Shown: positions 23,193-53,425 of the stretch, one piece after another
How the letters are laid out: every line of letters begins with the position of its first letter
How positions within the stretch are numbered: the stretch's first letter is position 1
Assembly (NCBI RefSeq): GCF_037042905.1
Contig: NC_087246.1
Span: forward strand, 64,046,001 to 64,110,000
DNA from: Lytechinus pictus
Lineage: Eukaryota
Reading direction: 5' to 3'
Length of the DNA stretch: 64,000 bases
The notes under the pieces: model-generated
What the model saw: the letters and a program-made list of their open reading frames with translations, nothing else
Databases searched by the model: none
What the model was told of the DNA's origin: nothing
Made by a program: the position numbers and the translations under genes

Positions 23193-24133
23193 CTGGTTTG
23201 CTTCCCACAAAATGCATGCAATCAGCAAAGGATTTCCTTGCTATTGTGACTTGATAATCCGGCTCCAACGGCAACCCTGGCAAGCGGAACCCAAGACATG
23301 TTATGAATAATTAGGGTTTTTGTGATCCGAGTTAGATGTGGAAGAAGTACAAATAGAATGTGAAATACTAGGAGATGTCTCCACGGAGGAGTGGGATTAG
23401 ATATTATCAACACACAGATAGAGTTTCTGAGACAATTCTGATTAATCATGATGAGGATGGTCGGGAGAAAATAAGGATAAATCACAGATGAGAGAGAGGG
23501 GGAACACATGGAAGAGGTGGTGGGGGGGGGGGTCATTACATCTCAAACCTAATTAAAATTGATCATAATGAGAATAGTAGGCAGAGAAGAGGGATAAAGC
23601 AAAGCACAAGATGGATTGAGCAAGGGAGGGATGGAGGGATGGGTGTGTGAAAGAGAGAAGAGAATTAGAAGGGGCAAGGGAAAATGTGCATGGGGTGGTA
23701 GTAGTGATGGGAAAAAATGTAAAAGCAGTGTGTGAGAGAGAGAGAGAGAGAGAGAGAAAGAAGGGGTTGCTGGGGGAAGAAAAACTCAGATATATTCATT
23801 AGAAAGACCAAATGAAATGAGGTGAATATGAAAGAAAGATAATTTAGATTTGATACACATACTTGCAGAAAAAAGATAATGGGATAAAGAACATAAATTT
23901 GAAAGCTTATGTACTGTAGAATGAAAAAAAATTTCAAAAACACATTTGAAAATTTTGTGGTATCCGCATGATCACATCATTAAATGAAGGCTGGATTCAT
24001 TTATTATAATTTTTTTTAATTAGATGTTGCCAAAGATTTTGTAGGATTTTGATGAATATATTTCCATTTCTACTATTGATCATGATGTGGAGTGAGTAAA
24101 CATGTAGGTGGGAGATAGAGAGAGGGATTTTGT

Positions 24134-24298
24134 AGTATGGGCCTATTTTCCAGAGTGTGGGTCAGAAGTGTGGGCCAAACTTTTGAAAGTGTGGGCCATT
24201 TTGCGAAGTATGGGCCAAATTCATGGGCCCATACTTCTACCCCTGAAGTGTGGGCCATTTTTGGCCATTTGGCCCAAACTCTAGGGGAAGTATGGGCC
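24134..24298 (+). repeat. Left subterminal array of AGTRTGGGCC motifs
   Basis: Forward copies at ~24134, 24154, 24167, 24188, 24207, 24247 and 24289. Inverted copies at ~24226 and ~24271. Confidence 0.9.
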
Positions 24299-24343
24299 AA
24301 AATTTCATGAGAAAGGGTCATTTACCAGTCTCGAATGCGAAAA

Positions 24344-24390
24344 TGAATAAATGAATGAAAGAATGAGTGACTGAATGAATGAATGAATGA
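24344..24390 (+). repeat. (GAAT)n microsatellite just inside the element's left end
   Basis: gaataaatgaatgaaagaatgagtgactgaatgaatgaatgaatga. Confidence 0.8.
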
Positions 24391-24533
24391 CGGTTCCTAT
24401 CTGAGAGAGCATGCGCAAACAATGTGCATGTTTTTCATTGCACGTGCTTATTTTGCATTAGCCAACTACAAGTACAGTACGGTATACGATTACGACTAAA
24501 CTAAGTTACGACCAGTTCCAAGCTCAAAAAATT

Positions 24534-24584
24534 ATGGCAGACCGAGACGACGACGACATCGAGGCTATGTTGGCTGATCCTCTT
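24534..24584 (+). CDS. YR exon 1 MADRDDDDIEAMLADPL
   Basis: ATG in attATGG context about 400 bp inside the left end, in a CpG-richer region. gtaagt donor, phase 0, matching exon 2. Confidence 0.7.
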
Positions 24585-27500
24585 GTAAGTAGATTGGAAT
24601 TGTCTTAAATTTTTGCCTATGATTTATTGAGAGTCTTTATATTAAGGGCCTTCGATCGGACTAAGTTAGTCCTGGCCCTTGGCTAAGTTTAGTCAGACCT
24701 GCGGTACCGTAGTCCAGCGGGCTGGGGCTGGGACGGGTTAACGGTAAAGACGTTGACGACTTTAACTTAAACTTAAAGTCACTCGCACCGCGGAAGGCTG
24801 AATGGGGGTCAACGTAAACGTCCTCTTTTTATTCGTTTAAAACTTAAAGTTTTCTTTGAGGCAATATTTGGATACCACTTGAAAATGATCATCTTCTAGA
24901 ATCTAGTTCTACCACTACCAGCAAAAATTGGTACTTTCTTGAAAAGTTGAATAATTCTTCACCTTTTTTTGGAAGTCAATTAAAACTGATTATCCATCAT
25001 TGATGAGACTTGGGCTGAGTTCCAAATAGGCCTAGTCAATGCTTGGGCTTCATTGCATAATCTTAGTCTTTATTGAGGTCTAAATTTCATTTTTATTACC
25101 TTGTCTGTATGGTATATCAATGCAGGTTTCATGACATTTTCATAATAATATGGTCAGTTTCCCCATGACATGTCTGCGCAGTCTCCCAAATCTGCGCACC
25201 CGCGTATCTGCGCGATTTCTAGTAAAACTTAAAAGAAGATACGCAATGAGCATGAACTTTGCAGTACACATGCAATATAGACAGGTATTCATAAAAAATT
25301 CGACTCAAAATGGTGGAAAAATAATGAATTCAGGGCATTTCATGTGACGGCCTCAAAATGCAGCGTTTGTCATCAAAATCCCTGAATCGTGTGCAAAGTG
25401 AATGAGTGCGCAGACAAGGGGTAGGCCTAGCCCTAGGCCTAATAGCCTACCATTTTTTTTCAATCTGAAAATGACTGCCCGAGGTTTTTTCAAGGAAATC
25501 TTATATTTTCTTTCATTTTTTAATGAGAATTTGGTACATTTACTCTTTATAATATAAGGAACACTATTAACCAAAAGATTTTGTGAAATAAGAAGAAATT
25601 CATGTTAAATCTTAACTCAAATTGTTACGTGCGCAGACTTGGGGCCCACCATCATACTGCTGATTGATATTTTTCTGGTAAAATTAGGGCTGAGAAACCC
25701 AAGCTAACAAGCTACATGTACATGTCTTTTGTTTTGGAAATTTATGTCATAATTTATGCATAACTCCAGGCAAGCCTAGGTCGGCTGTGTGCCTGTTAAT
25801 TTGGTTGTGTTTAATTCGATATGTGTGTTGGATACATACAGAGTATAGCGCTGTGCTTCTTTGTCGCGATTTGGGACTGACGAACCAAAGTTAATCAAGG
25901 AAATGTCTCTTTTGGCAAAATGTATGTGTATATTTGTATAACTTATATTTAAGTCATGATTTTGATACCAGATGGTAGAAAAGATGCCTTAGACTATTGA
26001 TGTTAGATGTAGTAATTAATAGGTATGTCTAATTTTATTTGTATGTCTATAAATGCAATGATTAATGCTATAATTTATTCAGTGTTTCCATTGACACAAA
26101 GTAACACTCTAGTGTTTCTTTGGCACTCGACTAGTTTGGTTAGTGCTCCTTTGGCATATGTTGTGACTCTTTGGCACTAGTCTGGTTCAGTGTTATATTG
26201 ACACAAGTGAAGCATTTATTCGGATTGAGTTCAGTTTGGTAACTCTAGTGCCAGTGAAATAGTGAATGATATATGAATATTTATGACAGAACTGTAAAAT
26301 GAATTATGATTCTTGTGCTCATATTTGATTAGATATATTGTATTTATGTTTTTCTCAATGGTCACTTGTAAGAAGTAATGTTTGGAAAGGTCAACCTACA
26401 TTTGGACCAAGCAATTTTGTGCTTTACAGCATGTTAAAATTCTTGTTGAAATAAAATGAGATGCAGTACAGGTCGTTGAGCAGACTGACAACTGTCTCAA
26501 ATGCAGCTGTGTTCTCGTCTAGCCTTTTCCAGCATTGCTTCCGTGACATTTGGAAATTATGTATGACTTTGGTGAAGTTATTGATGATTGTGTGGGTTAT
26601 ATGTTTATTTATAAAGGACCAGTTCCAGGTTCAAAAGATGAATTTTTGAGGAAGAGGCTTCAGGCCTCAGTTACTTAAAAATGCCACTAGTGTCTCATTG
26701 GGAGGCATTTTTTTTTAGTTAGGCATTCTTTTAGTTAGGAATTCTTTTATACAGTAGTTAGTTAATTCCAAGTCAGTTATTCGCTCAGTTAAGCATCTAA
26801 ATTTGAATGCATCCAATATTTTATAGGACAAGAACAGCAACTATTTTTTATATTTGAATCAAGTGATTTTGCTCCTTGTGTAAATAGGATGTAGTTTTAA
26901 GGAGTGCTTTACATGTATATAGGCTGAAACTTGTCAGTTTGGCAAACACTTTTACTTTCATTCATGCTCTCTACAATTTCTAGCTATTCACTCTAATATA
27001 AGCACTCAAGCGTAGAACCAGTTAGGGTTAGGAAGTTAGTAAATTTCATTATTAGTCAAAGCAACTGAAAGTTTGAGATTGATTAGTTCAGGCACTGAAG
27101 TACAGATTGCAAGAAATGAATTCTTAGATATGCAGGATGTCTTGATTTAAAGTACGTAAAGCCGAATAGAAAGTTCTGAAGTTGGCAATAAATAGGGATT
27201 AGTAATTTGAGGCTAATTTATTGTAGAGACTAGGGTAGTAGTCCATGGTTAGCCAGGAGAGAGTTAACATGTAGACGAGGGGTGGAGAGACCCGTTAGTA
27301 AAATTCCCGTTGAGTGGTAGCATAATGTAGGTATTGATATTTCTCACTGCTAGAAGATAGTTGATTTGAGTTGGCTCGAATTTGGACTGGAAATATTTTG
27401 TAGGTGGCTAATAGGAAGCCTATGTAGAATTGAATGGAGACCAGGAAGGCCCAGTATAGAACTACTGTTTAGGTTTAGTTGGAAAGACAAGATAAATTTG

Positions 27501-30500
27501 GTCGAATTGACTTCAATTGTTTTAACTTTACATTACATGAATTACCTCACTTATGTCTGATAGAATAAAACCCATAAAACTGAGCTAGCTTAATTACAGG
27601 TAGATTAGTAGATTTATATATTTAGAAGTAATTTACAGGATACCTGTACTAGATAGCACTAATAAGATGTAAATTTGTACATATAGGAAAGATGAATTAT
27701 TACAAGTAACTGATTTGATACCATAGTTGTACGTGCCAAATGCATTGTACAATGCTTTTTATTTATGGAATTTCTTGGCTTGATTGCCATATTGTTGGAA
27801 AGAACAGTTAATAAAGTTATTTGTTACTTGTTTACTTTAACGATTTTGCTTGATTGATTCATTCTTTAAAATGTCTGGTCACATGCTAGTCACTATGGTA
27901 GTTATTAAATTAGTACTTCAACATCTCATTTAGATAGTAAATCAGAAAAATCATAGAACGGAATCATTGTTTAGTTGTTATGCTAGACGCTTAACCATGT
28001 CATTGTGCCTTAGATTGCTTGCTACCGTATAGGAGAACCGTAACATATAGTACATGTGATGAGAATCTGCCCCAGTTAGAAGTTGTGTGTGATAGCTCGA
28101 GTTTAGTTGTGCTAGCTTAGACACTAGTGGATAGCGTTGCATGTAGTTTGTGATGCTATGTGGAGTTGGTGAATCAAAGAAGTTTGATTGATTGTGCACG
28201 TTTTAGTGCATGAGATTAGTAGTTAAAATCATTTCAAAAGTGTTCTTAAAATGTTTATTAGGTGGTCTGTCGATGACAGATCACCTCTTGATTTCACCAG
28301 AATTTTCTTTCTTTATTCTTTATTTATTTTTATTTCTTCCGTAAACTTTTTTGTACACACGTTCACTCGAAATCGACATGGTCAATTTCCTTCAAATTTC
28401 TGTCAGTCATCAAGCCCTATGATTTCAAGTTAAATCAACTTTTTCAAGGTCATCAGGTCATCGCGACGTCATCCAGGCGCCATTTTGTAAAAATCAGGTC
28501 ATTATCATATCTCAATAACGAGTCATCAAAATTCAACTATATTTGGTATACATCAACTTCAGGTCAACGGTCAACTAAAAATTTCATCAATTCCGCGCGC
28601 GCACCTCGACGCGCATTAAAATTTTAAAATGCTCAAATTCGTTCCACATTAATTTTCCATACGTTTTAGGCCATTTTAAGCATTTTGCAAAAAACGCGCG
28701 CGCACACACATGCGCGCGCGTGTTCGCGCGTAATTGCATCTTCCAACATAGAATCGCCAAATTTGTTTATATCAATGCATCAATAATATAATTCTGAACA
28801 ATTTGATACCTTGATCAACCAACCTTCTACGACAAGTAATAACAAAATTATCACCCGTTAAACTTTGCAGCATGTGTGCGCGCGAGCTCTCACTACAGGC
28901 CATATATGGGCAAAAACATGTCTATTGAAAATTCACTGTAGCTCTTTAAAATAGTCCGTTGACCCAAATTTTTTTTTCATATATCGATAGAGTATGAGTT
29001 GTAGATTTGATTTCATGTCACCATTGCCCCTCAATTTGATCATGACGTCATCAAAATTGCGCCTAAACTGAAAATTTCATTTTTTCAAAAATGACGTCAT
29101 CAAATTTATGCAAATTTGATCATAACTCTGTGAATATTGATCATTTTTCGCCCAGATTTTGATGTGTTGTAGTTTAGAATGTACTCTTTCTCGTCAATTC
29201 CATGGATTTTTATTTTGAAAAACGCATCATGGTGTAAAATTGCGATGAAAAGAGGCATGTCATTTTTCCTCATATTACGTGTAATCTCTATGGGACATGA
29301 CTTTTTCTCAAAAGTAGATTCTACATTCGTCTATTTCGTGAGATATATCTCCATTTTTTCTTGTTAGTTATCCCTGAGCTTTTGATATGATGTAGCTGAG
29401 ATTCTAAGTTTTCGGAAGTGTGCCCTCCATTTTTCGATCAGATGCCAGGATCATACCCGTTTTTCGCCAGGATCATGCCCGTTTTTCGCTTGCAAAATTG
29501 GATTTGTAATTCTCAAATTTGCTTACGTCTAATCTCTATGGGAACGTGTAATCTCTATGGGGATTATCGTGGCTCAATGGATAATGCCCTTGACTTGAGT
29601 TCTCGGGGGCGCAGGTTCGAGTCCTGGGGGTGAACAAGATGATTTTTTTTTTCATTTTTTTGTCTTTTTACCACCTCGTACATGATCCTTTATGATAATT
29701 AAAAGGTATGAAAGTTGAAATTTAGCAAGATTAAACAGATTATAATTTTTTCATATCACATGTATTTTCATATATCAAAGAGACCCTTTTCACAGTGCTT
29801 TATCATCTCCCGTCTTTCACAAGTATTCCATCCATAATGATTAATGAACATTCCGTTGTCATCATGAAGATCATATTGATCTGCTTGAACATGGTAATAG
29901 TGATCATGATGGCGAGAATAAGGACAGACCACCTAATTCGTCCGCATGACGAATTAAAATCTAGTTTATAATTAGTTGTTAACTCATCGATATTGTTGCG
30001 AAGTGCAAGTTTGTTGTGACACATGAGCCTTGAATTTAGAGATGTTCTGCATGCACTGGTGTCGAGTTTAAGTGAGCATGAATGTTTATGATTTCTAGGG
30101 TGTCGGGGTCAGAGGTGACCAATTAGAAGTTGTGGTGATTGTGACATGTTGAATTTGTGTGCCAATGCGCTTACAGCAATTTGTGAATGATTAAGGCATT
30201 TAAATTACAATGTTGTTGTTGTTATGGGCCAGTGAAGCTGGCCCATGACGCTCTTTTAAAGTTCAGATGGTGGCAGCGTACTTTGTGGAGAATGGTTGAT
30301 GATAATTGGTGGCAGAGTATGATAGGAATTTTCAACATATTTTCCATTCTTTATTTTCTCTCTTGTTTCTTTCTTCTTTCTCAATCGTTTACTCTATCAT
30401 TCTATCTTTATCCTTGATTTCTCCATCATTCATTTTTTCTATTTTTCATTTCTTACTCGATCTTCTCTTTATCTGTTTCCCATCTTGTTTCACAAAACCC

Positions 30501-33500
30501 CTCTCTTTTTCCTCTTACCCGCCTTCCCCTCTATCTTCTATTTTCGCCGCAATAATTCATTGCTTTAAAAATAACAATTAGTCTAGACTAAAGTTAGAGG
30601 AAATACAATCAAGAAACATTCTCACTCGCTATTCCAAATATTACATAAATTATTTCATATTTACTAACCGTTTTCTTTGCATTGGGCTTGAAGCATACCC
30701 TTCCGCAAAAAACAATTATTTTCTTGAGTGACAAATAACATCATGATTCCGGACGCTCGCCGGACGGGTGAAGATGTTCTTGATTAATGATGTAATTAAG
30801 AATTGGGGTGTTTTTTTCTTCATATGTCATATCGTGAGTAAATTCTAAATTTTTTCATATCAAGTCTGAACAAAGTTTGGAAATATTATTTAATAATTTG
30901 TGTGTGCTAACTAATCTTCATTTTTGTCTTATTAGCTGCATGTTCCATGGCTTTTTTTCCAATATTTTGCTAGTTCCTTAGCATTACACAAATAAAGTTT
31001 GTTACGATAATAGTCTTGTTTAAACACCAGCTCGGAATCTATATATGTCCACACCAGAGAAGTGTTAAAACAACACCAGTTTGGAATCAAACCAATGCTG
31101 TTTTGATACTTCTTGGTGTTGTATAAACACATATTTGGCGTGAGGCCAAAAACCAAACTGGTGTTGTTTAACATTTCTCTGGTGTGGACATATATAGATT
31201 CCGGGCTGGTGTTGAATCAACAATTCAGTTTTTGCAGTGTAGCCCGGCGACATGTGCACGCTTCCCTTGCTTGCCTTTCCAATACAGGAATTTTTCAGCA
31301 ACTATTTTCTGAACTTGCTACTAGATGGTATATTGGAGCACTTGTGGTCGCATGTGGATCTTCTGAATAATGAAGAGTTAATTTCTCTTATTTTTTAACC
31401 ATCAGGTGCAGGCACATGGGCACGATGTCACCAGAATGCTGGCTTATAGCATAAGGCCAAAAGTATACTTCAGCCACATGCAAAAAGGTGGGTCCTTTGA
31501 AGAATTGCTAAATGAATTACAAAGGAAGGAATCTGAGGAAAGCCAGCAAGGAGCAGGCCAAGGGATAGTTCCAAGGGATAGTGATGATGATCATGATGGC
31601 GATGATGGCGATGATGGTGGTGATTATGAAGAGGAAGAGGAACTACTATATGAATTACAAAGGAAGGAATCTGAGGAAAGTCAACAAGAAGCAGGCCAAG
31701 GGATAGTTCCAAGGGATAGTGATGATGATCATGATGGCGATGATGGTGATGACTATGAAGAAGAAGAGGAAGAAGAGGAAGAGGAACTACTATATGAATT
31801 ACAAAGGAAGGAATCTGAGGAAAGTCAACAAGAAGCAGGCCAAGGGATAGTTCCAAGGGATAGTGATGATGACGATGACGATGATGAAGAAGAACTCTGG
31901 ACATTGCAGGAGGAAGATGAAAGAGGATATTCCAGTGAAGATGGACAGGAAGAGGAAGCTGTGGAGGAAATTAAAAAAGGTCAGTACTCTGTTAATAATT
32001 CCTTAAATCATTAACCCTATTGTTTCTGAAACTTTATTAGTAAAAGCTTGTGTTCACATAACACCAATATTGAAGAGATGAGATTAGTAGCAATCGAAGG
32101 TTACTGATAATCCCCACTTAAAACATCCATTTATAAATGCTTTCAAGCCTCTATTATGTTTTGAGTGTCTGCATTCAGAATACATGAAATCGCACTCAAA
32201 TACAACTCGATAAACGATAACCCAAACTATACAGTCCAACCTCTTATTTGGCCTCCCTTTATCAGGATCTCTCTAATATCCGAATGCAATCTTCCTGTGA
32301 TTTTCCCTAGTTTACTCAAATAATTACTGGGAAAACAAAGATTTCAAGCATAATCATTATTACTAAAAAAAATGTGAATTATATATTATTCCGAACATCT
32401 GTAATAAACATTCAGATGAACTTTCATGTTGATAACATGCTTTCAGACACCTTAGACCCATGCAACTGCATGTATTAAACATAGAGTCTCCCATATTCAG
32501 GTAGAAATAGGATGCGAAGTGATGTGGGTGACATGAATTCACAGTATTACATGGTAGTACAAGGTGTCCAGTATCCAGTAGAACCATGCTCGTAGTGAGC
32601 ATGGCGAATTCGCTCAAGAAAACATGACCTGACAAAAAAAATGTGTAGAAGGTTAATTCATTATCTTTTGTTTGCCAGCAGATGGGAAAATTAATTGTGT
32701 TATACATTCAAAGGTATAGAATTAAGATTTTGAATAAATACTTACATGTATAATAATAATGTGTTTTCTGTTTATTTATGTACTAAGGAACGAAAAGGAA
32801 GCAAGGACAAGATGGGAAAAAGGCGTCCAAACCAGCAGGTAAACAATTTACACTGTATATTTGTACATGTATACAGCAATGATTTGAAATGTAGAGGATA
32901 TGTTCAATGATATCCTGCTGTCAGGTGCAACTTCTTGTACATAGGACAGTCAGTCCACCTTATTGAGCAACAAAGTGTCTTGGCATGCATTTGTGTTGCT
33001 GGGGTACGATAGCATGAATTCTATATAGTTCACAGTGGTAGGCAGTCTGCTTCACGAATGAGTCCGGAACTTTGGTGAGTGACTAGTCCCTGAAAGATCA
33101 GTCATGCAACACAACATCTTGGCCTTGTTGCATAGAACTCTATAACTAGAGATAAATTTTAACTGGAGATTTTTTATCATTATTTTGGGGGTTTTGTGTT
33201 CAAGTCAAAAGTCAAAATATGTAATTTTAGTCCTCAATTGTCACCAATTGTACCGGTTTTATGCAATGGCCCTTGACAGAATGTAAACATGTATGGACCC
33301 CAAGTCAATTCAATTCAGGTTTACAAAAAAACATGATTGACAGTCAAAACTGGTTTTAATGTGGATTGGAGATGAGTTTGTGAAATGGAATGGACCTGTA
33401 AATGCGAGCTGTAAACCGAAGATGACAGATGATCATACTCCTTCATGAAATATCAAGAAATATATATATATATCTAGTTTAATTTGAACCATTCCATCAT

Positions 33501-36500
33501 TTTCACTGTTGATATGACAAATAATCATGTTTTCAAATATTTCATACTGAATTATAGAATTGAAAGTTGTAGAATTTATCCTTTTTCAGAAGTTAGTGTG
33601 CCACTGATACACCCTCACTTCCCCTCATACTCCCCAACATACATGCACAAAATAGATATACTCTATTAATCATTTTATCCCTCGAGATTAGAAAAAAATA
33701 ATAATAGGCCTACACTGGTAGAAATTTTCCTATAAGAGTCTTGTAGGCCTATTTGGTTAAGGAAGACCTATACTCATGATTCATTTTTTAAAATGTCCTA
33801 CCTTTATATTCCCTATCCCTTTAGTTACATTTATTTAGTAATACTATTATTCACCCTACATGCAGATCGAATCGAGCGAAATTGCCCACTTTGTAATGTT
33901 GCGACAAGAACGCTTGCCCGGCATCTTCGCCGCAAGCATACACAGCTGAAGGAAAACGAGATCTGGCATTTCATATATCAAGCCAGAGAACGGTGAGTAT
34001 AGTTCTTTACTCACCCATTGCCTCCAAGATTATCTGAATTTCATAGGTTTAACACAGGGACTACCCAGTTCCTGTAACCAATAGATTAAACTCTTTGCAA
34101 GTTTTGTTTGTAATTTTGTACAAGTGGCATGAAAATCATTGACAGGAAGTGTCGCTGTTATTCCAGAACTGAACAATAAAAAAAATCAATATTCTATTTC
34201 ATTATGAAGAGAATTATAGGAGAATGGACAACTGAATGATGGAAATACAAAGCATTTTCACATTTGCACCTCATAATTGTGTTATAAAAGGTTATTGATA
34301 ATTGATAAGGTGTGATCATCTGCAGACTGCAGTTAGCAAATTTATACTTTCTAAAGATTGAAAATATGCATGGATATATTAAGTATTTGAAATCAAATTT
34401 CAAAATCCCTGCATTCTGGTCATATAAAACTCGGAATTGCTTTCATGAACTGGTATTAAACCAACATGTTATAAAATAAAAGCTATGGGAATCATGTGTT
34501 CAGAGAAATTCTTATTTCTTACAGTGTGAGTATATGATGTAATATACATGTGACATACTTCTTCTATTTTTTAGAGTCCCAATTCAGAGGAAGAAAACCA
34601 GAGATGAAGGACGAGAGAGAACTGGACAGAACTGTCCCCTTTGCGCCGCAAAAGGATTAACCAAACTCTCAGACCATATGAAGAGGAAACATAATGGCCA
34701 CACAGTGGAAAAACAAGGTACTTTGAATAATTTTGTCAAAGCAATCTCATGGGGTAAGCCATTTATCACATTTAAACTATAAAAAAAATCCAACAACAGA
34801 AAATCAGGCATAAGAATTTTATATTCTTGCAAAAGTGGATTTATTACACATTTGTAGTTGATCATATAGGAAAAGGTATGCAATTAGTCATAAAGGTAAT
34901 AATCTCCCCCCTGCACACATATACACTACCAGCATGATGTTTCTGGTGTAGTAATTTGTAATGGCTTATTGTGAATAAACATTGCAATGATTTATTTTGA
35001 AAAAGTAATATTTTCCACTTCGAGATTAAGAATCCTGTCCATCTGTGTTTCCAATAATGGCTTCATCAAAGTTTGTATTTTTGTCTCACCTGTGAAGCAG
35101 AGTGAGACTATTGGCGCCACTTTTCCGGCGGCGGCGTCAACACCAAATCTTAACCGAAGGTTAAGTTTTTGAAATGACAGCATAACTTAAAAAGTATATG
35201 GACCTAGTTCATGAAACTTGGCCATAAGGTTAATCAAGTATACTGAACATCCTACCTGAGTTTTGAGTCACATGACCAAGGTCAAAGGTCATTTAGGGTC
35301 AATGAACTTAGACCATGTTGAGGGAATCAACATCAAAATCTTAACCTACATGTAAGGTTAAGTTTTTGAAATGTCATCATAACTTAAAAAGTATATGGAC
35401 CTAGTTCATGAAACTTGAACATAAGATTAATCAATTATTGCTGAACATCCTGCTTGAGTTTTGAGTCACATGACCAAGGTCAAAGGTCATTTAGGGTCAA
35501 TTAACTTTGGCCAAATAGGGGGTATATGTTGAATTACCATCATAGCTTAGAAAGTTTATTGGTCTAGTTCATAAAACTTGGACATAAGAGTAATCAAGAT
35601 TCACTGAACATCCTTTGCGCATTTCAGGTCACATGACCAAGGTCAAAGGTCAATTAACTTTGGCCATGTGGGGGGTATCTGTTGAATTATCATTATAACT
35701 TTGTATTTTTATGGATCTGATTCATGAAACTTGGACATAAGAGTAACCAAGTATCACTGAACATCTTGTTTAAATTTAGACCCCAGGGTTTAGATTCTAG
35801 ACCACTAACGTCAGACTCTAGATCTAAGAGTCTAGATTCTAGATCTAGAAAAGTCTATATCTAGAGTCTAGCTCTAGAGCTCTCACGTTATGGTGGTGGT
35901 CTCCAAGTCTGTTAACGATTGGAGTTAAGATTTTAATATGAATTCTAGATCTATCTATTTATTTCATAAATTCTTTCAGTTGCATAATGTTTTATTTTGT
36001 TAGACCTCTAGATCTAGACTCTAGATCTATATTCCAGATCCAGACTAAAGTCCTATCTCATAAAAATTTAAAAGAAATAGATCTAGAGTAGACCTAGGCC
36101 TATAGGTCTAGATCTAGGCCTAACGTAGGTCTCTACAAATCTATCTGCGTCGTTGTGCCGCCGCTTAAGGTTTTTCCACAAACTATTTTAATCCGTAGAT
36201 CTACATAATTATGGTAGTCCTATATACTTAGACTCTACCTTTGTCATCACGAAAATTGGCCGATAGTGATTGCAATGGTCAAGATTGACCACCAATGGCA
36301 TTTCCCAGTCGGCGACCTCCCTGTCTCGGGTGCGCGGTACGATGTACGATTCCTTTGTCTATCGCATATACTTGACCATAATACTGAAAATAAAATAATT
36401 GCCAGAGTAGATCAGGCTTTAATTATTCCGGCAAAGATACCAATACCACTGAGTGAAAACAACTTCTCCAAGAACCACTGTACTGAAAAGTGACCTTTGT

Positions 36501-39500
36501 TTTTCATTTTGCTTCCTTGTCCATTACTGGATGGATAGTTGAAGGGAATGACACCCCTGCCATATCATTTTTCTAAACAAGTCTAATAGACTAATGAGAG
36601 ACAAGACTATTTTTTGTAAACAGTTGAGGTCTGAAATTGTATTGTACTTTAAAAATCCCAAATTCCCAATCAATCAAAATTTGCCGTTATTAGGTAATTA
36701 TTAATTTTTTGAAAATATTCCCCTCTTCATATTCCACAGCACCAATTATGGATTGTCCTCCTCCTCCACCACCTTCTTGTGCTTCGTCTATGTCTGTTTC
36801 ATCCCTATCTCCCCCTCCATCCTCATCTGCTGCTCCATCTTCATCTCCTGTTCTATCTTCATCTCATGCTCCATCCTCATCTCACGCTCCATCATCTCAT
36901 GCTCCATCCTCATCCGCTGTTCCTCCCACACCTTCACATTTTGTTGCTGTATTTAATCACCCCTTATCTGCTCACTCTCATCATCATTGTAATCATGTAC
37001 ATGTACCACTTTTCAATTCTTCTCAAACTCCATCTGGATTTTCTTGTAAGTGTTTTGCCTTCTTTTTTTTCCTTTTCTTGATCATTTTGTTTGTCCTGTA
37101 CATTATCATGGTCATATCATATTTGTTTCTTTGAAGTTGTGTCTTTTCTTTGTCCATTGTTTGTGTATCATTTTGTATGCATGTTGTGAATGTAATGTCT
37201 GAATCCTTTGCTGTGAACAGAGCTACCTACATGTATCTTTTTTCATCTTCAATGAGGGAAATTCTTAAGGTGAGCTTTTAAGATTTCCTCATTTTGGACA
37301 GTATTTCAATGTTAAAGACCTAGACTGGACCCCAAAATGAAATTGACAAATCATATCATATACCAATTGAAAGCTTTATAAAGATAGCATTGTAAGCTTT
37401 AGGCATTTTACTGCTTATCAGCTGAGTACTTTCCTTAAAGTGATTGTTTAACATTGGTTTGACTTTTAAAAAATCTGAGCTCGAAGGTCACACATGTCAC
37501 CAGTGTCTGTGATATGTTACAAAAATGAAGCCCAGAAAAAATTGCATTCGAAAATAATTATTTAGTGCTTCAAAAATTGAAATATAAAGTGACCGGAAAC
37601 ACCACCTTAATTTCATCCCATACACTTATGTGTACTATTTAGGCGTCTAGTAGACGCTTATTTACAAAATCAGGGTTTGCCTTGTAGTTTTAGGTTTTCT
37701 TTCTCAATAACAGTTGTTTTCAGGGTTTATTAGTTCTAATACATGCACTTGTACACATGTTTCATCTTGGTTTAAGAATTTTTTTAAATCGGCTGCTCAC
37801 AAAGTTAAACCATACCTTTAAAGGACAAGTCCACCCCCAAAAAAGGTTGATTTGAATTAAGAGAGAAAAATTAAACAAACTTTAACACTGAAAATTTCAG
37901 ATGTAAATTAGGAAAGTTATGATATTTAAAGTTTCGCTTAATTTAACAAAACAGATATGCACATCCTGGTCGGTATGCAAATGAGGGGACTAATGACATC
38001 ACCCACTCACTTTCTTTTGTATTTTACTATATGAAATATGAAATATTTCGATTTTCTCCTTATTGTCATGCGAAACAAAATGAAATTGCTTCCTGAACAT
38101 GTGGAATTACCATTAATTTAACATTGTTTATTTCAACCAAGAGTGTGCAAAAATTGAAATATTGTAGAATTCAAACAATAAAAAAAAAAGTGAGTGAGTG
38201 GCTGACATCATCAACTCTTTCATTTGCACATCACTAAGTTGCACATAGTTACCATCATATCTCTGTAAGTGTATTGGTCTAGTTCATAAAATGTGGAAAT
38301 AAGTCACCAAGTATCACTGAACATCTTGTGCGAGTTCTAGTAGTTTTCAAAGTCAGCACTGCTGCTATATTGAATCGCGTGATGCAGGTGAGACGGCCAG
38401 AGGAATTTCACTTGTTACATTTTAAATTCCTTTATCTGAAGGCACCAGAAGCATATTTACTGGCCAAATGTCAGCAGTGTTTGGTTGCAGGGAAAGTACT
38501 GTATGGATGCATTCATCCATGTCATCATTCTATTCCCTTAATAATTATGATTATTTTATTCATTTTATTTTTTATCTCCTTAGCCAAAGATGGCATCTTC
38601 GAAAGGTATTTGCAGTTCACAAGCTTCTATTGCAAGGAGAAGACGGCTGAGCAGCATAAAAGCCAGCTTGAAAAAATTGATGATCTTGCCGGTGGCCTGT
38701 CAGCACTCTTCTCTGACCATGATGCAATTTACAGGTATATGGGATTCAATCTGGTTAATATATCCTTGGCCAGATACCCTATATGGAATAATTTGAAGAC
38801 TTATAACACACTGAATAGTGAATTAAAAGTTACATAGTATGTGTTAATGCATGTAATGAAAAAAAAAGTAATGTGTCACAATATTTGCTCCCTCAGAAAA
38901 ATTAGAAATTTATATTTGAGTACAAAATGAATGTATATCCTCGCTCTTAACCCTAAACCTACCAGGGGGAGGGGGAATTTTGCCCCCTTCCAGTTTTAGT
39001 ATTTTTTATTTATTCATTTATTTAAAAACAGGGAAGCCCATTCAACAAAGTGTTGGTCTCCCATGGGGCCCTGTAACAGTGTACATAGCATAACATAACA
39101 ATTATGAGAATTCATTTACAAAGCAACATCATAAGAGAGCCATAAATGAATTAGTAAGTACACGTGAAGGAAATAAGGAAATACAATTAACAATATAAGT
39201 AAAATTATTTTAAAAGCAGATGACGTGAAAGAAATAAGACGTGTATTGTTACAATTACAATGAGCCAAAAATCTGTTAAGAAAGTAAGCTGAAGTAATTG
39301 TGAGTCGAACAATATCAAAATAGAGCTAGGGCCATATGTTAATTATATATAATGATTGAGGTACAGCTTGAAAAGAAGAATGCTTATGGGTCATGATTAG
39401 ATAATGCTCAATGTTTCTAAAAATGAAATTTAAATGATGCAAAGCTAGTTTGGGATCTTATTTCAGTTGGTAGGTTATTATATAGGGATGGGCCGTCATA

Positions 39501-42500
39501 GCATAATGCGTTTTTACTGTATTCTGTGCGACATTTAGGGAGTACTAGGTCGCCTCTTGCTGACTGGCGGGTGTTAATTTGGTAAATTTCACCAAGTTGG
39601 AGAAAATGAGGTTTCGTGTGATTATTCCACATACATTTTTTACTTCGTTTAATGTTCTCGGCATGACTATTTATGACTTTTTTTCAAGTATTGCAAAACT
39701 TTTGAGACCAAATTTGTCACTCTCAGTCATATCACTTCAAAGCCCCATAAGTAATGATTATGACAATATTATTGTTGGGGATATTCAGAAGATTAAGTTC
39801 ACCCAAAAATCAAATTCTTGAAGCTTTATTTTTTTATTTACAGGTAAAAAAATATTTTTGCCATAAGTTAGCATAAATTAATTAATATAAAATACATATA
39901 TTAGAATTTAAAAAATCTCACTACACAGTCTTGTTTATTACATTGGCCTCTACCTTCTCGCAAATTTTCATGAGCTAAATCTGTAGGGGGGGTGGCCAAA
40001 ACACAAGACCCAGTGGGATTAGGGTTAACTAATTATTTTAGTTTTAGAAATATGTTGAAAAAAAACACCAAGAAGTTAATTCTAGGACAACTTACTGTTT
40101 TCCTTTCTATGTGACATTAAGTTGTAGCATCTTTATTTAATAATTTTGCCTTTATCCTAGTGTATACAAACACTTGAAGACCACATACCAGCCAAAAACG
40201 GTCGGCAAATATCTAACAAGTGTGGCAAAACTGGTGGCTATGCTCAAAGTAGAATATGCGGAAGTCGAGAGACTGCAGATTACGGACAGAGACCTACAAA
40301 GACTGGAAAACCTCCTAACTCCCTTGTCTAAGAAGACATCCATGGGAATAAAGGAGCGAGAAGCAGAGCTTAAAGACAGCATTGCAGGTTGCATTAAAAA
40401 AAATTGCTGCGTTATCATTTTTGAAAGGTTTTTGATTAAGTTCATTTGAATCATCCAGTTCTCTCATGAGCTTTTCCAAATCATTTTCTTAAGAACTTTC
40501 AGATACCCATTTGTTTATAAGTTATGCATGTTTTTTCTAACATATTTTTTCATTTGTTTCAAAATGTTCTATTTGCTTAACAATGTTCTGCCTTTTATGA
40601 ATAATGCAAATAATTCATTTTTGTGCTTTTTTTGTATTGATGTTATCTCTATTATTTTTAGCTCACTTGAGCCAGCTTTAGTTCATCATGCATTGTCTGT
40701 AACTTAACATTTTCATATTCTCTAGAATGAGTGTCAGATTTAAAAAAAAATTGGTAGAAATCGCCTTTTGGATATGGGGTGTGAAGTTCAAATGTTTCCC
40801 TTAAATCCAAAGTGGTTCAGGGGACAACCCTTCTTTTGCAAACTGTTCAATGTTACTATTGCAGCCCCATTTGCTAAAACTATTAAGGTTTCGCCCATTA
40901 ACTTCAGCTTGGAAATTTAAATCAATATCAAATTTGGTAGCAAGTAAGAAGTAAAATGAGCAAGAGTTTCTAAACACTGGGACGAAAGGTCAAAGTTTAA
41001 GGACAAAGGTCAATTATTGTTAGAAATGGGGGGTGTTCATATTGCATAGGTCAAGTTGGATATAAGGTTAGTCTCCACCACCAGGATCTTTCATTTGTGA
41101 TTACACAAGTATTTATGGAATTTCAGTGTCATATCTTTATGATAACCCCCCCCCCCCACCAATTCTCTGCCATTTATAATGAAAAATATTATAGTTTTTA
41201 GAACTGCACCATAAATATTACTTAACTTTAATTTCCATAATCACATTTCTTACTGGAAAAGATGTCATGAACTCACAAAATACAGTGTAATACAAAATCC
41301 ATTTAAAAAAATAAATGTGTAGGTGTGGGATAGGCAAATGCTAGAGGCCTTGTAAAATAGTCTGGAACCTACCAAGGACAGGTGCCTGATCTTACTGCCC
41401 TGTCCACTCGCCCATAGGAAAACCTCGGCAGGCTCATTACTCACAAGGGCTCTAGTAGTGCAGGCCTAGGCCTAACCCCTAGACAGAACAGCCATCATCA
41501 ATCGAAAGCAAGTCTAAACAAATGGGATGCATGATTTTGTTTTAGACTTTCCAATCAATAATTTCATGTGTGGATCCTATTTTGAATTTCACAAGAATGC
41601 ATATAGGCAAATTATTACATGAAAGATTCAGGCAATAATTGCAGGAAGGCAGAGGCATACCAGTCAATTGCATGCAGTCAAGTTTTTTGTAGTTTTTGTT
41701 GTTACAACTGTTCATTGTTTCAATCTAATAATAGATGCAATGTATACTCATATGCAGAGATAATAGTTGCTGTTTGTTTAGTATTTTTTAAATGTTAAAA
41801 TGTCACTGAAGTGATACCATTTGACTATATAATGCTTATATGCATGCTTCTAATCATTAATGTTAATTTTATTTTGTAGGTGTCACCATGTTCGGTGGCA
41901 GCAGCATCAATAAAGTTTGATATTTATACTGTTCGGTTTAATATATTAAAAGTTTTTCATGCACAGAAATTTTTCAAGGCTTTCCTTGTCCTTCATATAC
42001 ATATGCATATAAAATAGCTGCAAAGATGACTCACCCCAAATCTTATCCACAGTGTCTCGAAATAACTTGATTTGTAATCTGTTTAGAGGTTACAAATATG
42101 AGTCTACCCCAAATTTGTAAATAGCACAAAACATATTAACTGCAGGTTTTATACACCAAATCTGTTAAATGTTAAAATTTGGCAAAACATCTTACTATGC
42201 AATGTTCCAAAACAACAAAACCTAAGCCCAGTAAAAATGCAATTGACGATTGCGAAAATTTAGGAGAAGAAAGATGCAAGTTTATTTAGTGATGCCTTCT
42301 GATCTGACTTTCACTTTTTCCCAAATTTTATTGCAAGAGCTGTAGAGAATAAGGGGCTGGGGCATCTTCCCGCAGGAATAACCACCTTGTACTTTATTTC
42401 AAGTTCATAATTGCTGATTTTATCATATTCTTCTGTTACAGAGGAACTGCTATCAAAGGAGGACCTGCAGATGTTTTACAATACCCTCTACAAGCAAGCA

Positions 42501-45500
42501 TGTGATGTGAAAGGTTTGCCGATTATTAGTATTTTTATTCGTCCACGCCAAAGATTCTGGAGGCATTATGTTTTTGGATTGTCCGCATGGCTGGATTTGT
42601 TATGTTTGTGTGTAATTCTAAGAACTCCTTGATGGATTTGACCATACTTGGCCCAAAGGTCCCCTGTGACGTGTTGAAGAACTGATTAGATTTCGGGCCA
42701 GATCCACCCAGGGTCAAAGGTCATATATAACTTTATGTTTAGTCGTTTCCCACATCCTCCCTCCCCAACCAGTTATCTTTGATTTGTTGACTAATCATTA
42801 ATCAATATGCATGCTATGTATATCCACCCAACCTAGGCTGTCAAAATGCAGTGTATTGAAAAAAATCAAACAAATAACTCAGACAATTCATTCGAATGTA
42901 GGTCTAAACAAACTGAGTTTAAAACTTTTAAATCTAGGACCGTAAATGTGTGGATCCTATTATGAATTTCACAATAATGCATAATGGGAAATTATTATAT
43001 AAAAAATTCAGGTAAGAATTGCAGAATTTGAGAAGACTGGGGCATACCAGTTGACTGCATGCAGTCAAATTACTAGTGTCATTGGAAAAACTTGTGTTTA
43101 AATGGTGTTGATAATGCAAATTAACTTACAAATTATGCACCCTCCCCTCCCAAAAAGAAAAAGGTAAATGTTTACACAGTTTTTAAATAACTTTCAGTGA
43201 AATGTGGCTTTAATAAGCCTAAAAAAATGGTTCATTTGATTGCAGTATATATGATATTCTCTCTCTTGCTGTCATGTACCAAAGGGAACGATCTGGATTG
43301 AATTAAATAAATTTGTTGTTATTCACATACCATTGACCTGCTGTAGAATTGGCTCTTAGCACAGAGGGATGAAAATTCTCCAAAATTTAATAATTTCAAA
43401 TTAAAAGATAAATTTTGAATTAATCATTGTTAATTTTGAAACCAAACAAAATTCAACAAATTGTATACTATGCAGCTGTCCAATGTCTGAATCAAAATCA
43501 AATGTGTCAAATGTTTTGTAACACCTATTACATTTCTGCAAGGACATGCATTGTGCATTTTTTGTGATTTACTTATTCACTTGTGTTATTTCTTCAGAAA
43601 TGCACTTGGCTGGGGAGAACCTAAAGTGGGAGCATGTAAGAAGCGTACGAGATTTCCTACTTCTGACAGCAGTACTTAGTGGTGCTCCGAGAAGCTGTGT
43701 GCTCACCAACATGAAAGTGGGAGAGGTTGCCAAAGCATTCAAGCAAAATGGAAGGGTTGTGATACAGGTACAAGCTTTTCTATTCCATTCAATTATTTTG
43801 TCATGTTCAATGATTAAAAACACAAAAATTATCCACAGACTCTTCTTAACAAAAAGTGCATTGAAAAAAAATCACAAACTATAAAAACATCAAAATAATA
43901 CATGTAATATGAGTATATCAATAAATAAATATACCCTGTCTGCATGCTTGAGGACCCACAACACGACACCAACCACTGATCCACTGTATGAAACAAAGTG
44001 TCACCCGCAGTGGAACAATGAAGTCTCAGCATGCTGACAGGTACCAGGAGCTATTACGTGGATACAGGAATAAATTAAATAAATAAATTAATTTGACTTC
44101 ACCTCCACCTCGCAAAACAACATCAGAATTCATTGAGATTCTGTACAAACTCAAAAACATCATCACCTATGATATTACACTTGCTTCTTACATCGAAGCC
44201 TGTAATCACCTTCAGTCCATTCCAAGCATCTCTTGAGTTTCCTACTTGGAATTTCCTATCTACTTTTTTACCAAATTGTCTTTTCCTGTTCTTCATATAT
44301 TTCTTAAAGTTTCTCTCATTCTGAAAGGCCTGAACTTTCTTGTGAATATAGTCTTTGCATTTCTTATCCACCTATGGTTTGTTATTAGGGTATGTTCTTG
44401 TTGTTACCTCAGGGATTAACATATTCTTACAAAACTTGATGTAGCCTGTGACAACATTCACTGTCTCGTCCAGAGATACTGATGAGTCCAGGAGGACATC
44501 CCAGTCGGTGCACTCGAAGGAGGCTCTCAATGACTAAGTTGTGTCATCATTCCACTTACTTTCCTTGTTACTGGTTTCACACGCTTGAGTTTCTGCCTAT
44601 ACTTCGGAAGTAAGTGGATAACGTTATGGTCAGAATTTCCCAAGGGCGGCTTGGCTACAGCCTTGTAACCGTCACGTACATTCACAAAGCATTTGTCTAA
44701 TGTGCGGTTCCCTCTGGTTGGTAGGTCAATGTACTGATACAGATTAGGCATTGCAGTATGCAGATCACAGCTATTAAAATCACCTAACACAATCTGCACC
44801 GAATCTGGTGAAAAATTAGAAGTCTGATGAATAGTACTTTGGATTTTTGTGGCAGCAAGATCAACATTCGCTTTTGGTGGGATGTATACAATAGTAACAT
44901 AGATATTATTAAACTCCCTTGGCAGGTAATGTGGATGAACTGCTATAGAGAGAAGTTCAATGTTTTCTGAACAGAAGGTATCTTTCACAGTGACGTTACT
45001 TTCATGACACCATCTCTCATTAATGTAAACACACACCCACCACCCCTGGTACTCTTTCCTGATGCTGCTGTGCGGTCCCCTCTAAGACAGATGAAACTGT
45101 CCATGGGCGTATCAGTTTCAGTGCCTTTTGATGAAAACCAAGTCTCAGTAAAACACAGTAAGCAGCTATCACGGTACTCATATCTGAATTTCATACATGC
45201 CTTCAACTCATCAAATTTATTACTCAATGAACGACAGTTAGCTATTATAGAGAGCAATGGGGGACGAAAACATCTCTTTAGGCGAGCTCTAACTCCTCCT
45301 TTCCTTCCTCTCTTACGTCTATTCAGCTCCCTTGGAATATCGCAGCTGAGCTCAACCTTGCCACTCTCGCCGGCAAGCCGAATCAGAGATTGAAGAGCGC
45401 CATCATATTCAACAACAACAACAACTTGTATGAAATGTTGATTTCACTATTTCGATTCGCATCATTTTTTTTTTAGGCTCTTGCATACGCACATTCAAAA

Positions 45501-53124: not shown

Positions 53125-53281
53125 AATGTGACAAGATCTGCCGCAAGTGTTGGAAGTCAATGAGCCCACATCAAGCATTACGTCTTACCCCCGTTTGGGA
53201 ACGGACCGCAGATCAGATTGCAAACTGCGGTATTTTACCCCATTTTGCATTTGAAAATCTAAAACATAATTTCCAAGCCCT

Positions 53282-53425
53282 GGGGGTCTTTTCATAAAGC
53301 TGTTCGTAAGTTAAGAGCGACTTTAACAACGACTGGTGATTATCGCTAATGGTTTGTACCATTTACCGCAAGACATGATCACTAATCGCTCTTAACTTAC
53401 GAACAGCTTTATGAAACATCCGCCT
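53282..53425. mobile_element. Short palindromic MITE
   Basis: ttcataaagctgttcgtaagttaagagcga / tcgctcttaacttacgaacagctttatgaa inverted arms. Confidence 0.7.

What the first reader, a model, noticed from the sequence alone, without database searches (positions are those of the whole stretch)
24109..24141. Insertion junction: 6-bp direct repeat AGAGGG splitting a GA-rich tract, suggesting microsatellite targeting
Seen: the left flank is ...gtgggagatagagAGAGGG|attttgtagtatggg and the right flank is cccatacttcttttgcc|AGAGGGggagagagggagggagagagagag. Removing the element and one AGAGGG gives one continuous purine tract. Established: tyrosine recombinases exchange strands across a 6-8-bp overlap, and Cryptons are bounded by short direct repeats. 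Inference: AGAGGG is the crossover core and the family prefers (GA)n-like targets. Chance is possible because GA tracts are frequent here (e.g. 23735-23760).
Basis: partly seen in the sequence, partly recalled or inferred. Interest (0 to 1): 0.75.

Follow-up and report, generated by a model that had tools for sequence, protein, structure and literature searches.

The report
Recombinase transposon that targets GA microsatellites
The junction is the real left end of a sea-urchin jumping gene that carries only a tyrosine recombinase, and all four copies I could recover sit inside GA-rich simple repeats, so the element does target such repeats, although the exact six letters AGAGGG are not shown to be the crossover point.

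Summary
Observation confirmed. AGAGGG lies at 24121-24126 and 59043-59048, bracketing a 34,916-bp element (24127-59042). Removing the element leaves one purine tract.

The hexamer itself is not significant: GA-rich flanks like these share a 6-mer in 37-47% of trials, and a 10-mer is also shared in another register.

The boundaries and the GA targeting are real. Three copies of the same family in Strongylocentrotus purpuratus lie on three different scaffolds and are 94-99% identical. The one tested for synteny is non-orthologous to the window. They begin and end with the same terminal sequences (ATTT[T/G]GTAGTATGGG ... GTCCCA[T/C]ACTT plus 8-9 nt) and carry the same inverted AAGTRTGGG arrays. 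Each is flanked on both sides by (GA)n, with the purine strand always on the gene strand (4 of 4).

One copy sits in the short GA tract of a 105-bp satellite monomer. 73 unoccupied monomers serve as empty-site proxies. The occupied monomer has about 23 nt more GA than they do, so the repeat is variable-length GA, not a fixed 6-bp core.

The only enzyme encoded is a tyrosine recombinase (fold confirmed). It does not match DUF3504, so it works like a Crypton but does not pass the CryptonA test.

Verdict: new variant of a known kind. Earlier scan notes concern this same window only; no other copy in this genome was noted.

The parts
24103..24126 (+). Left flanking GA-rich purine tract. It ends in AGAGGG (24121-24126), the target-side half of the split microsatellite.
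   Evidence: The equivalent tract abuts the left terminus in all three S. purpuratus copies.
24127..24141 (+). Left terminus of the element, ATTTTGTAGTATGGG. The first A could equally belong to the GA tract.
   Evidence: 14 of 15 bases match ATTTGGTAGTATGGG at the left end of L001, L008 and L009. The run X11 contig that matches the element exactly stops at 24120.
24134..24298 (+). Left subterminal array: seven (A)AGTRTGGG(C/T)C motifs on the + strand (24134, 24154, 24167, 24188, 24207, 24247, 24289) and one on the - strand (24226-24235).
   Evidence: The same array is present in S. purpuratus.
24127..59042 (+). Whole element, 34,916 bp. It is an intron-rich copy bloated by other repeats. The compact S. 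purpuratus copies are 12.3-16.2 kb.
31406..52488 (+). The recombinase gene, as exons matched to S. purpuratus LOC100892106 gene models. 31406-31996: acidic repeats. 33868-33993 and 34573-34719: two CPxC...H...KH zinc knuckles. 38595-38735 and about 40174-40370: N-terminal domain. 43597-43770: box I Arg. 48252-48542: Lys and box II Arg. 49170-49394: His and Tyr. 50877-50993 and 52387-52485: C-terminal tail. All matched exons are open.
   Evidence: tblastn, tblastx. The tyrosine-recombinase fold of the homologous P0002:170-400 is shown.
44527..48012 (-). Nested non-LTR retrotransposon fragments (endonuclease and RT-like ORFs) on the opposite strand inside an intron. Absent from the S. purpuratus copies.
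   Evidence: Exo_endo_phos_2, weak hit. No counterpart in L001.
58070..59034 (-). Right subterminal array: five AGTRTGGG motifs on the - strand (58070-58078, 58309-58319, 58517-58526, 58926-58934, 59026-59034).
   Evidence: Four motifs in the same arrangement in L001 at 21003-21754.
58597..58972 (+). Non-coding right subterminal block conserved with S. purpuratus (67% over 387 nt). It includes a nearly invariant stretch of about 50 nt around CGTGTACAAAA[C/T]AAATGGGCGGA.
59024..59042 (+). Right terminus, GTCCCATACTT plus CTTTTGCC.
   Evidence: Aligns with GTCCCACACTT plus TCTCGCCCG at the right end of L001, L008 and L009.
59043..59097 (+). Right flanking purine tract. It begins with AGAGGG (59043-59048), and a second AGAGGG lies at 59053.

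Best explanation
Positions 24109-24141 hold the left junction of a Crypton-like DNA transposon (24127-59042). Its only enzyme is a tyrosine recombinase with N-terminal zinc knuckles.

Shown:
- The family has fixed ends.
- It has arrays of an AAGTRTGGG motif in opposite orientation at the two ends.
- It is multicopy and young in S. purpuratus.
- In four independent insertions it lies inside a (GA)n or GA-rich tract, always with the purine strand on the gene strand.
- The GA tract is present on both sides with variable length.

Inferred mechanism:
- The recombinase excises the element by recombining the two flanking GA tracts, giving a circle whose joint reads right end, (GA)n, left end.
- The circle integrates by strand exchange between its own GA tract and any genomic GA tract of the same polarity. 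Any GA repeat of a few units supplies the 6-8 bp of identity that the overlap needs.
- After integration the element is therefore bracketed by GA runs whose summed length is target plus donor.
- The motif arrays probably bind the recombinase or its N-terminal domain, like arm-type sites, and help set direction.

AGAGGG in the window is simply the part of the GA-rich sequence that happens to be identical on both sides. It is not a defined core.
For: Junction text and coordinates.

Motif arrays: enriched and confined to the two ends in the window and in S. purpuratus L001 (9 copies against 1.3 expected).

Same termini at the same distance from the GA tracts in the window, L001, L008 and L009.

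Independence of the insertions:
- L001, L008 and L009 are three different Spur_5.0 scaffolds.
- Homology between them stops inside the GA tracts.
- L001 lies in a PARN intron, with CAF1 exons 0.9 and 3.7 kb from its ends. The window has no PARN exon in 24 kb to the left or 5 kb to the right.

Empty-site proxies: 73 unoccupied satellite monomers in L009 carry a purine tract of median 17 nt exactly where the element sits. The occupied monomer has 16 + 24 nt.

Purine-rich 17-mers occupy only 0.2-1.2% of positions.

Recombinase identity:
- Conserved Arg, His-Lys-Thr, Arg and His...Tyr-Tyr motifs in alignment A6.
- The profile hits integrase and XerA in the PDB.
- For the AlphaFold model (pLDDT 73), the first 44 of the 50 Foldseek PDB hits listed are all XerA, Cre/Tre, XerH, XerD, Tn1549 Int or an S. 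aureus integrase, and two poxvirus topoisomerase IB entries appear further down.

No other enzyme: no RT or DDE domain in the compact 12.3-kb copy or in the window copy, apart from nested LINE fragments.

Precedents: CryptonF-1_cRei ends in CACCG and inserts at CAYCG, with clean excisions (PMC9977147). Nimavirus tyrosine recombinases with a C2H2 domain and a SAM-like N-terminal domain insert into (TAACC)n (PMC10871703).

Read evidence: in run X11 a contig identical to the element ends at 24120. Runs X10 and X11 hold the element half of the stretch but not the unique left flank.
Against: - No circle junction, excision footprint or true empty allele was seen. Recombination itself is inferred.
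- Only four copies, and three of them are one young S. purpuratus subfamily.
- No second copy could be recovered from the Lytechinus genome. The read evidence for more copies there is ambiguous, because runs X10 and X11 may be RNA or low-coverage DNA.
- The box II His of the canonical catalytic set is not conserved in this family, so activity is not guaranteed.
- The inverted motifs lie 7-9 nt from the GA tract, not directly against a 6-8 bp spacer as in classical core sites.
- Microsatellite slippage after insertion could account for part of the extra GA length.
Confidence: 0.75

Rival explanations
1. One reading: AGAGGG is a defined 6-bp crossover core carried by the element and required in the target, as CACCG/CAYCG is for CryptonF-1_cRei.
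For: AGAGGG is identical on both sides in the window. The X11 contig that matches the element extends exactly through GAGAGGG and stops at 24120.
Against: No S. purpuratus copy has AGAGGG at either junction; they have pure (GA)n. A 6-mer match between such flanks has P of 0.37-0.47, and a 10-mer is shared in another register. The satellite copy shows about 23 nt of extra GA rather than 6. A Lytechinus-specific core cannot be excluded, because that subfamily's terminal 8 nt differ.
Confidence: 0.1
2. GA tracts are chosen by protein recognition or DNA structure (zinc knuckles reading GAGAG, open chromatin or H-DNA at GA tracts), not by homology with a GA tract carried by the element. The flanking GA on both sides is just the split target, later expanded by slippage.
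For: The protein has two conserved CPxC...H...KH knuckles preceded by basic residues. GA tracts are mutable, so the length differences could be secondary.
Against: Strict orientation in 4 of 4 copies and junctions precise to the nucleotide fit sequence-level recombination. The occupied satellite monomer's total GA (40 nt) exceeds the largest of 73 unoccupied monomers (29 nt). The knuckles give only weak generic C2H2 / zf-Di19 hits, and no GAGA-factor family was listed.
Confidence: 0.12
3. The GA tracts are part of the element (terminal microsatellite repeats) and it inserts anywhere, so there is no target preference.
For: GA abuts both ends in every copy, which would also be true if the element carried the tracts.
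Against: In L009 the satellite monomer already has a GA tract at exactly the insertion point, and the monomer sequence continues in phase on either side. GA tract lengths vary from 10 to 235 nt between copies.
Confidence: 0.03
4. It is a cut-and-paste terminal-inverted-repeat transposon with a target-site duplication, for example TTTTG next to the inverted AGTATGGG motif. On this view the recombinase gene is cargo.
For: TTTTG occurs at 24128-24132 and 59035-59039, next to an 8-bp inverted repeat. Subterminal motif arrays are typical of hAT or CACTA elements.
Against: The supposed duplication is conserved between independent insertions on the left (ATTTTGT versus ATTTGGT) and is absent on the right in S. 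purpuratus (TCTCGCCCG), so it belongs to the element. No DDE transposase domain in any frame.
Confidence: 0.01

Closest known systems
Cryptons (Goodwin et al. 2003; Kojima and Jurka 2011, PMC3212892), especially the active CryptonF-1_cRei of Chlamydomonas (PMC9977147)
   Same: A DNA element whose only enzyme is a tyrosine recombinase. No long terminal repeats. A short sequence at the terminus is repeated in the target, so copies are bracketed by direct repeats that are the same in all copies. Low copy number.
   Different: The repeat is a variable-length microsatellite tract rather than a fixed 4-6 bp word. There are arrays of a 9-11 bp motif in inverted orientation at the two ends. The gene has many introns. 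For animal Cryptons no terminal repeats were found, and the paper's Additional file 1 lists them as 'n.d.'. The recombinase gives no DUF3504 or Phage_integrase Pfam hit, unlike the CryptonA recombinases.
Telomere-repeat-specific tyrosine recombinases of endogenous nimaviruses (Kawato et al. 2023, PMC10871703)
   Same: [quoted passage not shown] Insertion specifically into a simple repeat, which then flanks the element on both sides.
   Different: Those are 280-400 kb viral genomes targeting (TAACC)n in crustaceans. This is a 12-kb element with one gene targeting (GA)n in sea urchins. Sequence relatedness was not tested, because I had no nimavirus sequence in hand.
Lambda-type integrases with arm-type sites (general knowledge, not tested here)
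   Same: Repeated binding motifs away from the crossover region on both arms. An extra N-terminal DNA-binding domain.
   Different: Here the motif is the same on both arms and is also the one nearest the junction. Binding is not demonstrated.
Microsatellite-specific R1-clade non-LTR retrotransposons (recalled from Kojima and Fujiwara, cited in PMC10871703; not read here)
   Same: The same strategy of living in simple repeats, said to include (TC)n/(GA)n.
   Different: Those are retrotransposons that use an endonuclease and target-primed reverse transcription, not a recombinase.

Membership tests
Crypton (tyrosine-recombinase DNA transposon, broad sense) | Encodes a tyrosine recombinase with the catalytic residues | tested here: met
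   Arg (GAPRS), His-Lys-Thr, Arg (IRKT) and His...Tyr-Tyr are conserved. The fold model matches XerA, Cre, XerH and Tn1549 Int, and the profile hits integrase and XerA. Caveat: the box II His is not conserved.
Crypton (tyrosine-recombinase DNA transposon, broad sense) | No reverse transcriptase or other transposase of its own | tested here: met
   Six-frame ORF pieces of the 12.3-kb S. purpuratus copy give no enzyme domain. In the window the only such hit is a nested LINE endonuclease fragment on the opposite strand.
Crypton (tyrosine-recombinase DNA transposon, broad sense) | No long terminal direct or inverted repeats | tested here: met
   No inverted repeat pairs the two ends. Only the 8-9 bp motif is shared. 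The subterminal motif arrays are an addition to the described pattern.
Crypton (tyrosine-recombinase DNA transposon, broad sense) | [quoted passage not shown] | tested here: met
   GA sequence abuts both ends in 4 of 4 copies. The length is variable (10 to over 40 nt of strict purine run), not a fixed 4-6 bp.
Crypton (tyrosine-recombinase DNA transposon, broad sense) | Several dispersed copies, as evidence of mobility | tested here: met
   Three S. purpuratus loci on different scaffolds, 94-99% identical, with unrelated flanks. Only one copy was seen for Lytechinus.
CryptonA (animal Cryptons, Kojima and Jurka 2011) | The recombinase matches the DUF3504 profile (E of 8e-12 or better in their searches) | tested here: not met
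   P0002 has no Pfam hit at E up to 0.1. Its relatives P0012 and P0005 hit Phage_integrase, not DUF3504.
Nimavirus-type simple-repeat-specific tyrosine recombinases | C2H2 zinc domain plus SAM-like N-terminal domain plus recombinase | tested here: inconclusive
   Two CPxC...H...KH knuckles give only sub-threshold C2H2 / zf-Di19 hits. The N-terminal domain was not modelled.
Nimavirus-type simple-repeat-specific tyrosine recombinases | Insertion into a simple repeat that flanks both ends | tested here: met
   The repeat here is (GA)n rather than (TAACC)n.
Nimavirus-type simple-repeat-specific tyrosine recombinases | Sequence relatedness to the nimaviral recombinase clade | not tested
   No nimavirus recombinase sequence was available through the tools.
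Cut-and-paste DDE transposon with terminal inverted repeats | DDE transposase and a fixed-length target-site duplication | tested here: not met
   No transposase domain. The candidate TTTTG duplication is element sequence.

The most novel reading that the evidence does not exclude
The element is one member of a wider group of eukaryotic recombinases (zinc knuckles, N-terminal domain, tyrosine-recombinase domain) that act as simple-repeat integrases. On this reading the target is set by whatever microsatellite the excised circle carries at its joint: (GA)n in sea urchins, (TAACC)n in crustacean nimaviruses, and possibly (TTAGGG)n for the distant relative P0012, whose locus L002 is subtelomeric with telomere-repeat blocks on both sides. 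Such an enzyme would be a naturally re-targetable, orientation-specific integrase for animal genomes.
Probability: 0.3. Interest if true: 0.8.

Novelty: new variant of a known kind. Interest (0 to 1): 0.62.

Why it matters
The 2011 survey found no terminal repeats in animal Cryptons and lists them as 'n.d.' [quoted passage not shown] How they integrate therefore could not be studied.

This family supplies the missing pieces:
- exact ends;
- a candidate binding motif;
- a simple, abundant and orientation-specific target;
- very young copies (99% identical) in a laboratory model species, S. purpuratus.

That makes the Crypton integration model directly testable in an animal, by circle-junction PCR and by donor/target plasmid assays.

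It also offers a small non-viral counterpart to the nimavirus telomere-repeat integrases. Insertion into microsatellites is a low-damage niche, which would explain how such an element persists at low copy number.

Tried and rejected
1. Word-index protein search with the 98-aa catalytic exon found nothing. Two further word searches with P0002 returned only P0002 itself and an older gene model. The copies were finally found through the 90% cluster list.

2. The reads tools (one call each, 5,901 letters laid). No contig was listed spanning the junction, no joint at it and no empty allele. The loose-end table was swamped by two high-copy repeats at 22976-23369 and 25143-25733. My estimate of about 8-10 Lytechinus copies from depth ratios is unreliable, because summed repeat depth is not linear with coverage, so I do not rely on it.

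3. A metagenome scan for the left terminus plus the next motif gave two hits (L004, L005). Both are chance matches in unrelated contigs.

4. The S. purpuratus L001 locus as an orthologue of the window locus was rejected. PARN exons flank L001 and are absent from the window.

5. TTTTG as a target-site duplication was rejected.

6. The zinc knuckles as GAGA-factor-type fingers was a lead from memory. Pfam and PDB searches gave no support.

7. Distant relatives were fetched (P0012/L002, P0005/L003, P0013/L006, P0004/L007), but their element boundaries could not be defined. L002 has an assembly gap (7512-8499), which I left unfilled. P0009 has no contig on record.

8. The exons were searched one by one.

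Full report
THE OBSERVATION

The window is AT-rich animal DNA.

AGAGGG occupies 24121-24126 and is followed by ATTTTGTAGTATGGG. The sequence CCCATACTTCTTTTGCC ends at 59042 and is followed by AGAGGG at 59043-59048 and a purine tract. The stretch between them is 34,916 bp.

The motif AAGTRTGGG occurs 10 times in the window against 0.83 expected. All copies lie within 24166-24296 (mostly + strand) or 58070-59034 (all - strand). The two ends therefore belong together.

IS THE HEXAMER MORE THAN CHANCE?

No.
- The 30 nt outside the outermost motifs share AGAGGG, but they also share TTTTG and, in another register, the 10-mer GAGAGAGGGA.
- Shuffled versions of the flanks share a 6-mer in 47% of trials.
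- Real GA-rich 30-mers from the window share one in 37% of pairs.

What is unusual is that both ends abut purine tracts on the same strand. Only 0.2-0.6% of positions in the window are as purine-rich over 17 nt.

WHAT THE ELEMENT ENCODES

Six-frame reading shows split exons on the + strand with the signature of a tyrosine recombinase.

A search of 1.84 billion representative proteins with the 98-aa exon at 48249-48542 gave only 13 hits. The best full-length one is P0002, S. purpuratus LOC100892106.

P0002 and an older gene model, P0014, align exon by exon to the window:
- acidic repeats, 31406-31996;
- two CPxC...H...KH knuckles, 33868-33993 and 34573-34719;
- an N-terminal domain, 38595-38735;
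- the box I Arg exon, 43597-43770;
- the Lys and box II exon, 48252-48542;
- the His...Tyr-Tyr exon, 49170-49394;
- two tail exons, 50877-50993 and 52387-52485.

All matched exons are open.

The catalytic region of P0002 was modelled with a nine-sequence alignment (pLDDT 73). The first 44 of the 50 Foldseek PDB hits listed are all tyrosine recombinases or integrases: XerA, Cre/Tre, XerH, XerD, Tn1549 Int and an S. aureus integrase. Two poxvirus topoisomerase IB entries appear further down the list. The sequence profile hits an integrase and XerA.

P0002 itself has no Pfam hit, and in particular none to DUF3504.

No reverse transcriptase or DDE transposase is present in the compact S. purpuratus copy. 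The window copy has only nested LINE fragments on the opposite strand.

OTHER COPIES

The P0002 locus (L001, Spur_5.0 scaffold AAGJ06000014.1) has the same motif arrays: + strand at 9516-9577 and - strand at 21003-21754. It also has a conserved non-coding block near the right end.

Its termini align with those of the window. On the left, ATTTGGTAGTATGGG aligns with ATTTTGTAGTATGGG. On the right, GTCCCACACTT plus TCTCGCCCG aligns with GTCCCATACTT plus CTTTTGCC.

Both of its ends abut GA tracts, of 235 and 116 nt.

This locus is not the orthologue of the window locus. It lies in a PARN intron, with CAF1 exons 3.7 kb to the left and 0.9 kb to the right. The window has no PARN exon in 24 kb to the left or 5 kb to the right, even at E = 10.

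The 90% cluster of P0002 then gave two more S. purpuratus genes, on scaffolds AAGJ06000011.1 and AAGJ06000007.1.
- L008 carries a copy at 2200-18363, 97-99% identical to L001.
- L009 carries a copy at 3739-16611, 94-96% identical to L001.
- In both, homology stops inside GA tracts and the flanks are unrelated.

In all four copies the junctions read (GA)n, then ATTT[T/G]GTAGTATGGG, and at the other end GTCCCA[T/C]ACTT plus 8-9 nt, then (GA)n. The purine strand is on the gene strand each time.

AN EMPTY-SITE PROXY

The L009 copy lies in a 105-bp satellite. Each monomer contains a short GA tract between AATCT and CTTAC.

The element sits in that tract, and the monomer continues in phase on either side.

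Among 73 unoccupied monomers the purine tract has a median of 17 nt (range 9-29). The occupied monomer has 16 nt to the left and 24 nt to the right of the element.

So the target already had a GA tract, and insertion added about 23 nt of GA. A fixed 6-bp crossover duplication would have added 6.

This fits a circle that carries its own GA tract and recombines somewhere within the aligned repeats. Slippage after insertion could contribute to the extra length.

READS

Laid on 21400-27300, run X11 has a 1,140-nt contig identical to 24120-25259. It ends at 24120, 7 nt outside the proposed boundary. Runs X10 and X11 hold the element half of the stretch but not the unique flank.

This marks a real discontinuity at the junction. 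It could mean several copies sharing GAGAGGG, or a transcript end. The nature of these runs is not on record, so I treat the result as weak support only.

A related species (run X7) holds the left flank at about 5% divergence. The listed rows do not show whether it has the insertion.

MECHANISM

Shown:
- precise conserved ends;
- inverted motif arrays;
- GA on both sides;
- a fixed orientation;
- young dispersed copies;
- a tyrosine recombinase as the only enzyme.

Inferred:
- excision as a circle by recombination between the flanking GA tracts;
- integration by strand exchange between the circle's GA tract and a genomic GA tract of the same polarity;
- the arrays serving as binding sites for the recombinase or its N-terminal domain.

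This is the Goodwin model for Cryptons, which is supported experimentally for CryptonF-1_cRei (CACCG into CAYCG, with clean excisions; PMC9977147). Here it is applied to a microsatellite.

The closest functional analogue is the nimavirus recombinase family. It has a C2H2 domain and a SAM-like N-terminal domain and inserts into (TAACC)n (PMC10871703).

COMPARISON WITH WHAT IS KNOWN, AND NOVELTY

Kojima and Jurka found no terminal repeats in animal Cryptons and list them as 'n.d.' (PMC3212892). I found no report of a GA-specific recombinase element in the papers searched. Repbase could not be consulted, so the family may already be deposited there under another name.

The element works like a Crypton and passes the broad definition. 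It fails the CryptonA criterion of similarity to DUF3504. I rate it a new variant of a known kind.

LIMITS
- Four copies, three of them from one subfamily.
- No true empty allele and no circle junction.
- The N runs in the window (941-1122) and in L002 (7512-8499) were left as they are.

Noticed in passing
L009:1-3722 and 16637-22935: The element copy lies in a long 105-bp satellite. Each monomer carries both a short GA tract and AGCAGTGTGGGAATGCATCC, which resembles the element's own subterminal AGCGAAGTGTGGGACATCGCC. The satellite may be a preferred pseudo-site, or it may derive from an element end.
   Followed up: partly
L002:5042-7511 and 20115-21271: The locus of the distant relative P0012 (which has a Phage_integrase hit) is subtelomeric. 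Blocks of (TTAGGG)n lie on both sides of the gene, there are 23-bp motif arrays at 830-2320 and 15287-17300, and about 4 kb is duplicated 15 kb apart. This hints at an association with telomere repeats. An assembly gap at 7512-8499 prevents a conclusion.
   Followed up: partly
proteins P0001 and P0003: Two predicted proteins consist of 7-12 tandem copies of a roughly 98-aa piece of the recombinase domain (the Lys to box II region). This looks like a tandemly amplified exon or fragment in some genome.
   Followed up: no
window 45883-46113 and 46493-46720: Two partial duplicates, 96% identical to each other, of the start of the catalytic exon at 48252 lie in the preceding intron. They are about 74% identical to the real exon (repeat finder families D15 and D17).
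   Followed up: partly
window 53868-54297: An almost perfect 214-nt palindrome (96% complementary, 2-nt spacer) inside the element, downstream of the last matched exon.
   Followed up: no
window 55692-56081: A 194-bp unit duplicated in tandem at 100% identity. This is a very recent duplication or an assembly artefact.
   Followed up: no
window 31508-31886: The acidic N-terminal exon contains 2.7 in-frame copies of a 138/144-bp coding repeat. The S. purpuratus protein is acidic in the same region but not repeated in the same way.
   Followed up: no
window 24307: A 151-nt contig of run X1 matches 24307-24441 exactly, but its first 16 letters do not match the window to the left of 24307. This could be a structural variant or a splice joint just inside the left array.
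   Followed up: no
window 22976-23369 and 25143-25733: Two very high-copy short repeats, with summed contig depth in the thousands to hundreds of thousands in the sea-urchin runs. One is in the left flank (a MITE-like inverted repeat at 23044-23196) and one is nested in the element.
   Followed up: no
window 18886-19134 (- strand): An open frame with a weak WD40 / beta-propeller hit (THOC3-type, E = 9.5e-5). This is probably an exon of the host gene next to or around the element.
   Followed up: no
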